NCBI RefSeq assembly: GCF_000143415.4 | Contig: NW_003314267.1 | Span: 2,955,839 to 3,019,838 of the forward strand | Reading direction: 5' to 3' | Length of the DNA stretch: 64,000 nt | Origin: Selaginella moellendorffii | Lineage: Eukaryota > Plantae > Lycopodiophyta | Shown: one piece after another, positions 35,141 to 38,786 of the stretch | How positions within the stretch are numbered: the first letter of the stretch is position 1 | Layout: each line of letters opens with the position of its first letter | Translations under genes and position numbers: made by a program | Notes under the pieces: model-generated | Databases searched by the model: none | What the model saw: only the letters and a program-made list of their open reading frames with translations | What the model was told of the DNA's origin: nothing

Positions 35141-37041
<1,901 letters not shown>

Positions 37042-37229
37042 AACCAATCTTGTCGATGAAAAGAAAACAAACACACAGGTCTGATCAAATTCACATTTTT
37101 ACGAGTTACAGAGCGAGGGCCGACACAGGATTTGCATGCAGGGCTCAATCAAACGCGTGGCGGAATCCGGATGCTATTTCAGCTGGTCCGGACGAGAGCG
37201 CAGACAAAGAGAAACGCAGAAGCAGGATC

Positions 37230-38129
37230 ATGGGCGCCTCGCAGTCTCAGCAGCTAGAGCAGCAGCCGAGCGGCGGCGTGGTCTTTCCCGGCGAAGAAGA
37301 AGAGAGGGGCTTCTATGGACAGCCAGCTTCGACCATGGAACCGGCACCGCCACCTCCAGCCAGCAGCTACACCCTCTTCATGAACGCCTTGACAGCCTTC
37401 GTGCCGGAGGAGCACGTAGGCCGGCTGGTGATGTACATGGCAATCTTCGGTGTCCTCTTCGCGGTGATCGGCTTGATCGGCCTCGTCTTCCCGTTCGTTT
37501 TCGCTATAGCGGTGGAGCAAGTGATGGGAGCTGTGATGGTGCTGGGTGGGATCTTCTCCGCGGTGCAATTCGGGGTCATGTACGACATACCCGGGAACAG
37601 CTCGTTTCTTCTCATGGGATTCCTGCATTTGGGATTCGGGCTGTGGATGCTGCTCCAACCGGTTGAAGCCGGAGTCATGCTCATGTTCGTGCTCTCTGGA
37701 TGGCTCCTGGGACATGTAAGTTATCTTCTTTGTATTGATCAACTTTGCTTGTGTGTTTTCTTGTTTTCAGGGGCTGCTCAAGACCTTCATGGCTTGTCAA
37801 GTTCGTAACTTGTCGTCGTGGCCGTTTGTGTTCGTGAGTGGAATTCTTTCGATACTGCTGGCGCTGCTTATCCTCGTCCTGGCTCCCAAGTACGGTGTGG
37901 TTCTTTTGGGAATTACTTTTGGCGCAGACATGTTTGTCTCGGGGCTGTCGATGATTTTAATTGCCGCAACCACTTACTTCTGTAAGTAGTCTGACCATGA
38001 TCCATTTGTTTTTTTAGTGTCCGATTCTAACTTTCTAACCTTTTTTTTTTGGTTCTTCCAGCCCGGAGAAGTCGTCCTCGGATCGACACTGAGCCTCTGC
38101 TTCCACCTGCGACAGCTCCTCCTGCGTAG
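37230..38129 (+). CDS. HdeD/DUF308-like multi-pass membrane protein, 3 exons
   Basis: Six hydrophobic helices in the HdeD pattern (G.L..IG.I.LVFP...G....LGG..., LL.P..G, W.....SGILS.LL, LLG...G.D...SG). N-terminus MGASQS; C-terminus DTEPLL. Confidence 0.75.
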
Positions 38130-38192
38130 CTACGTGTTTCTATTCCTTTTTTTTTTGTGATGTGATCCTTTGAATACAATTCCGTTATCATT

Positions 38193-38468
38193 TCAGGAAG
38201 AAAGAATACATGGGACGGTGCCGACTCTAGAATCGGTGCTCGAGTTCTCTCGCCATTTGAAAACCTCGATCGAGCGCAGGGCTTGCTCTTGGAGATAAGG
38301 ATGCTCGGAACTGGAGCTGCCAATGAACTGATCGCCAGCATCCTCGACAAGCATGTGTTGCTCCTTTTGGCGAACGGAATTTCCTGAGATCAAGCTCTCT
38401 CTGAAAAGAACAATAACGAGGACGAACACCATGAACTGGATTGTTCCTCCTCCTCCGGAAGATGCCAT
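38193..38468 (-). CDS. Putative small secreted protein (91 aa), unknown family
   Basis: Good ATG context and hydrophobic segment FMVFVLVIVLF followed by a polar region; no recognised motif. Confidence 0.4.
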   Translation of the reverse strand: MASSGGGGTIQFMVFVLVIVLFRESLISGNSVRQKEQHMLVEDAGDQFIGSSSSEHPYLQEQALRSIEVFKWRENSSTDSRVGTVPCILSS

Positions 38469-38786
38469 GCGATGCGAAGAAAAGGAGTGAGGCTCTGCCC
38501 TTTTCAATTCGGGTTCGAAAAGGAATATAACCCTCGCAGATGCTCGCACATTCCGAACGGCAGATTCCGAGATACCATCACAGTAACCACACTCTTCTCT
38601 GTACGTACGTGACTACGATTGATATTTGTTGCATGTCGACAAGAAAATCCGCTCAAAACTTTCGGCCCGCAAGTTGATGATGATTTTATATGCAGCTTCC
38701 AGCCCACAAGTTGATGATTTAATATGTGCAAGAAATTTCTCGCCGCAAGCAAGGAACCTACAAAGGTGGCGTAACGATTTTCATTT

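What the first reader, a model, noticed from the sequence alone, without database searches (positions are those of the whole stretch)
37230..38129. Bacterial HdeD/DUF308-like membrane protein domesticated in a plant, with eukaryotic sorting signals
Seen: the six-helix core follows the bacterial HdeD pattern closely (GVLFAVIGLIGLVFPF...GAVMVLGGIF; LLQPVEAG; WPFVFVSGILSILL; LLGITFGADMFVSG). The gene has two spliceosomal introns, an N-terminal MGASQS and a last exon encoding RIDTEPLL. Established: HdeD is an enterobacterial acid-resistance inner-membrane protein; MGxxxS is the N-myristoylation consensus; [DE]xxxLL is an adaptor-dependent endosomal/tonoplast sorting motif. Inference: a horizontally acquired bacterial gene rewired to an acidic endomembrane compartment, possibly for vacuolar pH or desiccation stress. 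I do not recall a characterised seed-plant orthologue.
Basis: partly seen in the sequence, partly recalled or inferred. Interest (0 to 1): 0.75.

Follow-up and report, generated by a model that had tools for sequence, protein, structure and literature searches.

The report
Ancient streptophyte DUF308 (HdeD-like) membrane protein
This is a real, transcribed Selaginella gene for a six-helix membrane protein of the mostly bacterial DUF308/HdeD family, but it belongs to an old gene family shared by green algae related to land plants, liverworts, lycophytes and ferns, so it is not a recent bacterial import.

Summary
Window 37230-38129 (+) in Selaginella moellendorffii carries a three-exon gene for a 254-aa protein. 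Its core matches Pfam DUF308 and runs collinear with the NCBIfam HdeD model. It folds confidently as six helices, like bacterial DUF308 proteins.

- **Age of the family:** relatives occur in Chlorokybus, Klebsormidium, Chara, Zygnematophyceae, liverworts, lycophytes (two Selaginella and three Diphasiastrum copies) and a fern. They form one clade (bootstrap 100) whose branching follows the species tree. Any bacterial acquisition therefore dates to the streptophyte ancestor. The donor is unresolved. No seed-plant or non-streptophyte eukaryotic member was found.
- **C-terminal motif:** a P-L-L core, usually E-P-L-L, sits in about 18 of 23 streptophyte tails. This supports a dileucine-type sorting signal.
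- **N-terminal motif:** MGASQS is not conserved, so myristoylation is weakly supported.
- **Introns:** RNA contigs from four studies confirm intron 2 and a 5'UTR intron. They retain the 55-nt intron 1 in three of four runs, which would truncate the protein.

The E. coli HdeD equivalog threshold is far from met. The biochemical function is unknown. This is a modestly interesting, uncharacterised eukaryotic branch of a known family.

The parts
37079..37141 (+). 5'UTR intron (GT..AG) with an alternative 3' splice site at 37128. It begins only 38 nt after the stop codon of the upstream tocopherol cyclase gene.
   Evidence: Joints 37078>37129 and 37078>37142 in RNA contigs of four runs; sequence read.
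37171..37257 (+). Upstream ORF of 28 codons in another frame. It overlaps the main ATG.
   Evidence: ORF list, (the listed ORF 37132-37257 holds this ATG); sequence; also present in haplotype 2. No evidence that it is translated.
37230..37715 (+). Exon 1, 162 codons. It encodes an acidic, proline-rich N-terminal extension (starting MGASQS, 37230-37247), a pre-TM1 motif specific to streptophytes, and helices 1-4 of the DUF308 core.
   Evidence: Translation. Pfam DUF308 at 26.3 bits, residues 72-141. HdeD profile positions 14-110. Covered by RNA contigs.
37716..37770 (+). Intron 1, 55 nt, phase 0, GTAAGT..(T/G)CAG. It is retained in the assembled RNA contigs. If retained, the frame stops at 37806-37808, giving a truncated product of 192 aa.
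   Evidence: Splicing is supported by the JGI model P0001 and by the same intron position in Diphasiastrum. The intron is absent in Riccia and Chara.
37771..37981 (+). Exon 2. It encodes helices 5-6 of the DUF308 core and ends in phase 1.
   Evidence: Translation. Pfam DUF308 at 20.1 bits. HdeD profile positions 120-184.
37982..38061 (+). Intron 2, 80 nt, GTAAGT..CAG.
   Evidence: Exact joint 37981>38062 in the contigs of all four runs. Diphasiastrum has an intron near the same position.
38062..38129 (+). Exon 3. It encodes the basic juxtamembrane stretch (SRRSRPR), the DTEPLL motif (38085-38102) and the TAG stop.
   Evidence: The P-L-L core is conserved in streptophyte relatives.
38130..38681 (+). 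3'UTR, or a region of overlap with the convergent SufE/BolA gene's transcript.
   Evidence: RNA contigs run on from exon 3 to 38681 and beyond. SufE/BolA is called on the minus strand downstream. The break at 38681 is a 37-nt haplotype indel, not an intron.

Best explanation
A nuclear, transcribed gene of Selaginella moellendorffii encodes a 254-aa integral membrane protein. Its core is a DUF308 (HdeD-like) six-helix bundle made of three two-helix hairpins.

It is one of two Selaginella copies of a family that has been inherited vertically since the common ancestor of streptophytes. That family most likely entered the ancestor once from a bacterium (inferred). Compared with bacterial DUF308 proteins, the streptophyte proteins gained three things: an acidic, proline-rich N-terminal extension with a conserved motif before helix 1; a basic C-terminal tail ending in a conserved E-P-L-L type dileucine signal; and characteristic core residues.

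Both termini are predicted to face the cytosol. The most likely mechanism (inferred, untested) is that adaptor-protein complexes read the tail and send the protein to a post-Golgi compartment, either the vacuolar or late-endosomal membrane or by endocytic cycling from the plasma membrane. There the helix bundle would perform the still unknown DUF308 function, perhaps involving titratable residues buried in the membrane.
For: - **Family membership.**
  - Pfam DUF308 scores above the gathering threshold for exon 1 and gives a second hit in exon 2.
  - Both exons match the HdeD profile collinearly.
  - An exhaustive phmmer search found 460 hits, with more than 100 DUF308 proteins of about 190 aa at E 1e-14 to 1e-6.
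  - The AlphaFold model of the core has pLDDT 94.9 and six helices. Its best Atlas match is a bacterial DUF308 cluster at TM 0.75.
- **Host genome.**
  - The neighbours are ordinary plant genes: tocopherol cyclase, SufE/BolA and lipases.
  - A second haplotype carries the same gene.
- **Transcription.** RNA contigs from four studies cover the gene and show intron 2 and the 5'UTR intron spliced.
- **Family range and vertical descent.**
  - Named relatives come from Diphasiastrum, Riccia, Spirogloea, Chara, Mesotaenium, Ceratopteris, Closterium, Netrium, Chlorokybus and Klebsormidium, plus a Selaginella paralogue.
  - They form one clade (UFBoot 100, SH-aLRT 98, and all 200 bootstrap trees).
  - Algal grades, Zygnematophyceae, embryophytes and lycophytes nest as in the species tree.
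- **C-terminal signal.**
  - A P-[LIF]-[LIMV] core, mostly preceded by E, lies 5-25 residues from the C-terminus in about 18 of 23 streptophyte tails. The tails are otherwise unalignable.
  - The proven lysosomal signal of human TPC2 is ESEPLL, and Arabidopsis TPC1 uses a similar signal for the tonoplast (PMC8946281).
  - AP complexes read dileucine motifs in plants (PMC9402974).
- **Topology.**
  - The basic residues cluster in the N-terminal segment, the loop between helices 4 and 5, and the tail (R12, K113, R121, SRRSRPR). The opposite side has only K149.
  - The N-terminus is acidic and does not resemble a transit peptide.
- **Selection.** The window copy keeps the family-conserved residues E43, H80, W105, H109, K113, R121, W126, P127 and D162.
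Against: - No localisation, binding or functional data exist.
- The acidic residue at position -4 of the classical [DE]xxxL[LI] motif is present here (D) but is not conserved. Relatives mostly have E at -2 or -3.
- The assembled RNA contigs retain intron 1 in three of four runs. Much of the mRNA may therefore encode a truncated 192-aa product lacking helices 5-6 and the tail.
- Bacterial origin rests on distribution and on a tree whose deep prokaryotic nodes are unresolved. Only the best 150 of 460 hits could be inspected, and only 30 of them were traced to a source.
- No solved structure resembles the fold significantly, so the core's activity cannot be inferred.
Confidence: 0.6

Rival explanations
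1. A bacterial HdeD gene was acquired by a plant lineage and rewired by N-myristoylation plus a dileucine signal to an acidic compartment, where it serves vacuolar pH control or desiccation tolerance.
For: MGASQS fits the myristoylation consensus, and DTEPLL fits [DE]xxxLL. DUF308 membership is confirmed.
Against: - The family predates land plants.
- Among the 26 N-termini inspected (this gene plus 25 relatives), G2 occurs only in this gene and in two divergent relatives, P0016 and P0260.
- A uORF overlaps the start codon.
- The HdeD equivalog score is 17-22 bits against a cut-off of 189.
- E. coli HdeD's own mechanism is unknown. It is described as an inner-membrane protein of the acid fitness island that also represses flagellar genes (PMC9769608).
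Confidence: 0.12
2. There was no horizontal transfer. The family is an old eukaryotic or plastid-endosymbiont (cyanobacterial) inheritance that survives only in streptophytes after losses elsewhere.
For: The gene tree follows the species tree back to the deepest streptophyte branches. The prokaryotic sister group is unresolved. DUF308 proteins do occur in cyanobacteria, for example Vulcanococcus P0239.
Against: - No non-streptophyte eukaryote appeared in any search, although EukProt proteomes are part of the library.
- The N-terminus is acidic and lacks transit-peptide character.
- The cyanobacterial sequence did not group with streptophytes.
- The cores of the Chara and Riccia genes are intronless, and Klebsormidium has introns at other sites. 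That pattern fits a gene that arrived without introns.
Confidence: 0.25
3. This particular copy is poorly productive. Intron 1 is mostly retained, so the main product is a truncated protein or an NMD target. The paralogue (LOC9650621/LOC112351400) would then carry the family's function.
For: - Contigs in three of four RNA runs run unbroken through intron 1, while introns on both sides are removed in the same contigs.
- No protein of 89-283 aa other than the partial JGI model was found for this locus in the 5.8-billion-protein collection, whereas the paralogue has RefSeq isoforms.
- The window copy departs from the family's CGAPG loop (it has YDIPG) and from W48 (it has A).
Against: - The ORF, both splice sites and the C-terminal motif in exon 3 are intact in both haplotypes.
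- Most family-specific residues are kept.
- Its branch length is ordinary (0.59).
- Contigs drop minor variants and cannot give isoform ratios. In the fourth run the contigs break on both sides of the intron, as expected for a mixture.
Confidence: 0.2

Closest known systems
Bacterial and archaeal DUF308 proteins (Pfam PF03729), about 180-200 aa
   Same: - Both have the same six-helix, three-hairpin core.
- Sequence identity is 25-33% over about 155 residues.
- The predicted fold matches a bacterial DUF308 cluster at TM 0.75.
- Both share glycines and prolines at helix ends, and the R...W motif in the loop between helices 4 and 5.
   Different: - The streptophyte proteins add an N-terminal extension of 45-120 aa and a C-terminal tail of 25-45 aa with the E-P-L-L motif.
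- They carry W105, P127 and a CGAPG loop.
- At position 109 they have H or Q, where 30 of 53 prokaryotic sequences have E or D.
- Some members contain spliceosomal introns.
E. coli HdeD (NCBIfam NF007577, acid fitness island inner-membrane protein)
   Same: It belongs to the same Pfam family. The two exons align collinearly to profile positions 14-184 of 190. N-in/C-in six-helix topology is expected for both.
   Different: - The scores of 17.4 and 21.8 bits fall far below the equivalog cut-off of 189.
- The gene has no acid-island context.
- HdeD's reported roles (PMC9769608) cannot be transferred to this protein.
Dileucine-sorted vacuolar and lysosomal membrane proteins (human TPC2 ESEPLL; Arabidopsis TPC1, NRAMP3/4, VIT1, INT1)
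   Same: Both have a short acidic-proline-dileucine motif in a cytosolic tail next to a basic stretch. E-P-L-L is identical to the end of the TPC2 signal (PMC8946281).
   Different: - The proteins are unrelated.
- Here the motif is C-terminal.
- Its function is untested.
- The acid at position -4 is not conserved among relatives.
SatP/AceTr succinate-acetate channels (PDB 5ys3)
   Same: This is the only solved six-helix protein aligning over most of the model (118 residues, 19% identity; Foldseek probability 0.75).
   Different: Z 6.8, rmsd 4.3 Å and E 0.69 are all within the noise for helical bundles. This is not evidence of kinship or of channel function.

Membership tests
Pfam DUF308 (PF03729) | Profile match at or above the gathering score | tested here: met
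   Exon 1 alone scores 26.3 bits against a gathering score of 25. Exon 2 alone scores 20.1 bits. Relatives carry precomputed PF03729.
Pfam DUF308 (PF03729) | Repeated two-helix hairpins forming a six-helix membrane core | tested here: met
   The AlphaFold model of allele P0001 has pLDDT 94.9 and helices at 7-33, 35-63, 70-89, 91-119, 126-150 and 152-173. It matches a bacterial DUF308 cluster at TM 0.75.
HdeD equivalog (NCBIfam NF007577) | Whole-protein score at or above the curated cut-off of 189 bits | tested here: not met
   17.4 bits for exon 1 and 21.8 bits for exon 2. The exons were scored separately. Even their sum is far below the cut-off.
HdeD equivalog (NCBIfam NF007577) | Contribution to acid resistance | not testable with these tools
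   This needs genetics, such as complementation of an E. coli hdeD mutant or plant knock-outs.
Acidic dileucine sorting signal [DE]xxxL[LI] | Sequence match in a tail of the protein | tested here: met
   D-T-E-P-L-L at 38085-38102, 8 residues before the C-terminus.
Acidic dileucine sorting signal [DE]xxxL[LI] | Conservation among orthologues | tested here: met
   A P-[LIF]-[LIMV] core, mostly E-P-L-L, is found in about 18 of 23 streptophyte tails from Chlorokybus to lycophytes. The acid at position -4 itself is variable.
Acidic dileucine sorting signal [DE]xxxL[LI] | Cytosolic exposure | tested here: inconclusive
   The charge distribution and the even helix number predict N-in/C-in. There is no experimental topology.
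Acidic dileucine sorting signal [DE]xxxL[LI] | AP-complex binding and motif-dependent localisation | not testable with these tools
   This needs GFP fusions with LL>AA mutations and AP mutants.
N-myristoylated proteins | M-G-x-x-x-[STAGCN] at the true N-terminus | tested here: inconclusive
   MGASQS fits the pattern. However, a uORF overlaps the ATG, and the start codon has not been mapped experimentally.
N-myristoylated proteins | Gly2 conserved in orthologues | tested here: not met
   Of the 25 relatives' N-termini inspected, only P0016 and P0260 start MG. The rest start MA, MV, MS, MK or MF.
Horizontally acquired bacterial gene | Eukaryotic members restricted to one lineage and monophyletic | tested here: met
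   Only streptophytes were found. The clade has support 100/98. Caveat: only 150 of 460 hits were listed and 30 traced to a source.
Horizontally acquired bacterial gene | Nested inside an identifiable bacterial donor clade | tested here: inconclusive
   Deep prokaryotic nodes are unresolved. One high-scoring prokaryotic group is soil Alphaproteobacteria/Xanthobacteraceae, but it is not sister to the streptophytes in the tree.

The most novel reading that the evidence does not exclude
A single bacterial DUF308 gene entered the streptophyte stem lineage. It gained a cytosolic E-P-L-L sorting tail and replaced a membrane-buried acidic residue with histidine. It then became a conserved protein of the vacuolar or endolysosomal membrane in streptophyte algae, bryophytes, lycophytes and ferns, and was later lost in seed plants. 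In Selaginella its output would additionally be gated by retention of a 55-nt intron.
Probability: 0.25. Interest if true: 0.55.

Novelty: new variant of a known kind. Interest (0 to 1): 0.35.

Why it matters
DUF308/HdeD is a very large prokaryotic membrane-protein family with no known biochemical activity and no solved structure. A eukaryotic branch conserved for roughly a billion years, from Chlorokybus to ferns, gives a second, genetically tractable setting in which to find out what the fold does. Marchantia-like liverworts, Ceratopteris and Selaginella are all candidates. The conserved sorting-type tail gives a concrete first experiment.

The family is also a clean candidate for an ancient bacterium-to-streptophyte gene transfer followed by loss in seed plants. 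That would explain why it has escaped attention in Arabidopsis-centred biology. It is not a dramatic discovery: the proteins already carry automatic DUF308 annotations, and the function remains unknown.

Tried and rejected
- **Contamination or a recent transfer into Selaginella.** I rejected this. The gene has plant neighbours, spliced transcripts, a second haplotype and relatives across the streptophytes.
- **Word-indexed protein searches.** They were insensitive. One hit came from exon 1, a few eukaryotes from the streptophyte profile and six hits from Chara. Their blanks say little.
- **Degenerate-pattern scan of prokaryotic genomes.** A single-protein scan with P0187 named only soil Alphaproteobacteria close to that query, and these are not sister to the plant clade. 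The donor remains unresolved.
- **Solved structures.**
  - The sequence search was blank.
  - Foldseek against the PDB gave nothing at E<=0.001.
  - The exhaustive VIA-align search gave a best Z of 8.4 on two-helix fragments, and SatP at Z 6.8, which is noise for helical bundles.
  - I therefore dropped the idea of inferring a channel function.
- **An early idea of mine.** I thought intron 1 was conserved family-wide, because many prokaryote-style ORFs end at '...H V'. This was corrected. Diphasiastrum shares the intron, but Riccia and Chara lack it and Klebsormidium has other introns.
- **The contig break at 38681.** It looked like a 3'UTR intron but is a 37-nt haplotype indel in a tandem duplication.
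- **Literature.** No paper in the library links HdeD or DUF308 with streptophytes or plant HGT. The scan's own notes hold nothing under these words.
- Exons were used by reference. The database model P0001 (the other haplotype's core, 174 aa, one residue different) stood in for the spliced core. The full-length 254-aa protein was therefore never folded or searched as one chain.

Full report
**What is at the coordinates.** The window comes from Selaginella moellendorffii.

On the + strand an ATG at 37230 opens a 162-codon exon that ends CAT|GTAAGT at 37715. A 55-nt intron ends ..TTTTCAG at 37770. Exon 2 runs 37771-37981 and ends in phase 1 at T|GTAAGT. An 80-nt intron ends at 38061. Exon 3 runs 38062-38129 and ends TAG. 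The predicted product is 254 aa.

I used the exons by reference. P0001, the other haplotype's spliced core as deposited, served for analyses of the spliced core.

**Is it DUF308/HdeD-like beyond chance?** Yes.
- Pfam DUF308 hits exon 1 above the gathering score (26.3 against 25 bits, E 9e-6) and exon 2 at 20.1 bits.
- The NCBIfam HdeD model aligns exon 1 to positions 14-110 and exon 2 to positions 120-184 of 190. Homology therefore continues across the proposed splice in the shifted frame.
- An exhaustive phmmer search of 1.84 billion representatives gave 460 hits at E<=1e-3. More than a hundred of them are proteins of about 190 aa at 25-33% identity across the whole core.
- An AlphaFold model of P0001 built on a 70-sequence alignment has mean pLDDT 94.9 and six helices paired as three hairpins. 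Its best Atlas match is a bacterial DUF308 cluster (TM 0.75, 168 residues, rmsd 3.1).
- All 30 nearest language-model neighbours of the Diphasiastrum orthologue are bacterial DUF308/HdeD clusters.
- The HdeD equivalog cut-off of 189 bits is nowhere near met. This is a DUF308 family member, not an HdeD orthologue.

**Is it a real gene of this genome?**
- The neighbours are ordinary plant genes. Tocopherol cyclase lies immediately upstream on the same strand, SufE/BolA lies downstream on the opposite strand, and lipases, a CLE peptide gene and a kinesin lie further out.
- The second haplotype carries the same gene with one amino-acid difference.
- Sixteen public runs from eight studies hold at least half of the sampled words of the stretch.
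- I laid four runs from four studies on 36600-38700. All four show the exact 37981>38062 joint for intron 2. They also show a spliced 5'UTR intron (37079 to 37128 or 37141, GT..AG). The runs are therefore RNA, and the gene is transcribed.

**An unexpected point: intron 1 is retained.** In three of the four runs a single contig runs unbroken from 37139 to 37981, through the 55-nt intron 1. That same contig lacks intron 2 and, in one run, the 5'UTR intron. In the fourth run the contigs stop at 37722 and resume at 37768. No contig shows the 37715>37771 joint.

With the intron retained, the frame stops at 37806-37808. The product would be 192 aa and would lack helices 5-6 and the tail. Contigs cannot give isoform ratios and they drop minor variants. 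Even so, intron retention is at least common.

Four things support the spliced model:
- homology continues into exon 2;
- the splice-site consensus is strong;
- the JGI model splices there;
- the Diphasiastrum complanatum orthologue has the same three-exon structure, with exon 1 ending '...GWLFGQ|' at the homologous codon and phase.

Several unnamed relatives recorded as prokaryote-style ORFs also end '...GW[FLI][LI].HV' at this site, meaning the ORF call read into a GT. The intron is not family-wide. The cores of the Riccia sorocarpa and Chara braunii genes are intronless, and Klebsormidium nitens has introns elsewhere.

**Who else has it.** The top tier of the exhaustive search is entirely streptophyte wherever a source name exists:

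| Group | Member found |
|---|---|
| Lycophytes | Diphasiastrum complanatum (three copies) |
| Lycophytes | a second Selaginella gene (LOC9650621/LOC112351400, 40% identity) |
| Liverworts | Riccia sorocarpa, R. fluitans |
| Fern | Ceratopteris richardii |
| Charophyceae | Chara braunii |
| Zygnematophyceae | Spirogloea, Mesotaenium, Closterium, Netrium |
| Klebsormidiophyceae | Klebsormidium nitens, K. subtile |
| Chlorokybophyceae | Chlorokybus atmophyticus |

A maximum-likelihood tree (LG+C20 PMSF; 64 sequences, 195 columns) puts all 20 streptophyte sequences in one clade. Support is ultrafast bootstrap 100 and SH-aLRT 98, and the clade appears in all 200 bootstrap trees. Inside it, Klebsormidium and Chlorokybus are basal and Chara comes next (97/98). 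Then come a Zygnematophyceae group (91/82) and an embryophyte group (98/89), which contains a lycophyte clade (98/96). In that clade the two Selaginella genes pair with different Diphasiastrum genes. A 137-sequence quick tree agrees.

The gene tree thus tracks the species tree. The family has been inherited vertically since the streptophyte ancestor, and it duplicated in early lycophytes.

No seed-plant protein and no non-streptophyte eukaryote turned up. Two limits apply. Only the best 150 of 460 hits were listed, and only 30 could be traced to a source. The word-indexed searches are insensitive.

**Bacterial origin?** This is plausible but ancient, and it is inferred rather than shown.
- In favour:
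  - The family is huge in prokaryotes and, as far as I could see, is confined to one eukaryotic lineage.
  - The streptophyte clade is monophyletic.
  - Its N-termini are acidic and proline-rich, not transit-peptide-like.
  - Intron positions differ between lineages, and some members have intronless cores.
- Against certainty:
  - The prokaryotic side of the tree is unresolved.
  - A high-scoring prokaryotic group identified as soil Alphaproteobacteria/Xanthobacteraceae is not sister to the plants.
  - A cyanobacterial sequence did not group with them either.
- I put ancient HGT at about 0.6, and old eukaryotic or endosymbiotic inheritance with losses at about 0.25.

**Eukaryote-specific features and likely mechanism.** Streptophyte members add three things.
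1. An N-terminal extension of 45-120 aa ending in a conserved segment before helix 1. Relatives have Y.F.IPIRPL.G.I.E.HLE+L, and this gene has YTLFMNALTAFVPEEHVGRL.
2. Core signatures. W105 is present in 17 of 17 sequences, and P127 in the W-P motif in 16 of 17. There is a CGAPG loop. Position 109 is H or Q, where 30 of 53 prokaryotic sequences have E or D. K113 is present in 16 of 17.
3. A tail that starts basic (here SRRSRPR) and carries a P-[LIF]-[LIMV] core, mostly E-P-L-L, in about 18 of 23 proteins. These range from Chlorokybus (REPLL) and Closterium (EEPLL) to Diphasiastrum (REPLL) and this gene (DTEPLL). The rest of the tail does not align.

The distribution of basic residues and the even helix number predict that both termini are cytosolic.

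E-P-L-L matches the end of the proven lysosomal signal of human TPC2 (ESEPLL). Arabidopsis TPC1 uses a related N-terminal dileucine signal for the tonoplast (PMC8946281). AP complexes read such motifs in plants (PMC9402974). The best-supported mechanistic statement is therefore adaptor-dependent post-Golgi sorting of a six-helix DUF308 protein. Whether the destination is the tonoplast, an endosome or endocytic cycling cannot be told from sequence.

The N-myristoylation idea is weak. Gly2 occurs only in this gene and in two divergent relatives. A 28-codon uORF also overlaps the start codon.

What the core does is unknown, even in E. coli. [quoted passage not shown] No solved structure resembles the fold significantly. 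Conserved titratable residues inside the helices (E43, H80, H109, K113, D162) hint at proton or ion handling or sensing. That is speculation.

The gene is an ordinary-looking but uncharacterised member of a pan-streptophyte branch of the DUF308 family. It carries a conserved dileucine-type tail and probably has an ancient bacterial origin. It appears to be absent from seed plants.

I found no paper linking HdeD or DUF308 with streptophytes. Interest is moderate to low: it offers a tractable entry point to an unknown fold and a candidate ancient HGT, but not a surprising new system.

Noticed in passing
window 36645-37229: The tocopherol cyclase gene has its last exons at 36645-36791 and 36863-37041, with the stop at 37039-37041. 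That stop lies 189 nt before the DUF308 ATG. A GT..AG intron (37079 to 37128 or 37141) is spliced out of the spacer. In two runs single RNA contigs join tocopherol cyclase exons to the DUF308 gene. This means either overlapping UTRs or read-through/shared transcripts. Contigs cannot tell which.
   Followed up: partly
window 37716-37770: The 55-nt intron 1 is retained in the assembled RNA contigs of three of four runs. Flanking introns are removed in the same contigs. Retention gives a premature stop at 37806-37808.
   Followed up: partly
window 37171-37257: A 28-codon uORF in another frame overlaps the main start codon. It is present in both haplotypes.
   Followed up: no
window 37066-37070 and 38682-38718: There are haplotype indels. 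About 4 nt of the spacer are absent in the other haplotype (L001). A 37-nt tandem-duplicated unit in the 3' region is absent from the RNA contigs of two runs (X1 and X7). Both produce false-looking 'joints' or loose ends when contigs are laid.
   Followed up: yes
P0006/P0151 (Selaginella paralogue LOC112351400/LOC9650621): RefSeq isoforms X1 (265 aa) and X2 (253 aa) diverge exactly at the position of intron 2. Only X2 carries the conserved REPLM tail, so X1 looks like an intron-retention or alternative-splice product.
   Followed up: no
P0004 (Spirogloea, 1208 aa) and P0005/L084 (Chara, 357 aa): These look like mis-modelled genes. The Spirogloea DUF308 domain is the last ~200 residues of a 1208-aa model, which is probably a fusion of neighbouring genes. 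The Chara model runs on past helix 6 into unconserved sequence and lacks the E-P-L-L tail.
   Followed up: no
P0011 cluster (19 members; JGI/IMG metagenome contigs up to 210 kb), P0015: Metagenome proteins labelled 'uncharacterized membrane protein HdeD (DUF308 family)' are in fact exon-1 fragments of streptophyte genes. They carry the eukaryote-specific N-terminal motif and stop just after reading into the intron. Plant or algal DNA is therefore being annotated as prokaryotic in metagenomes.
   Followed up: partly
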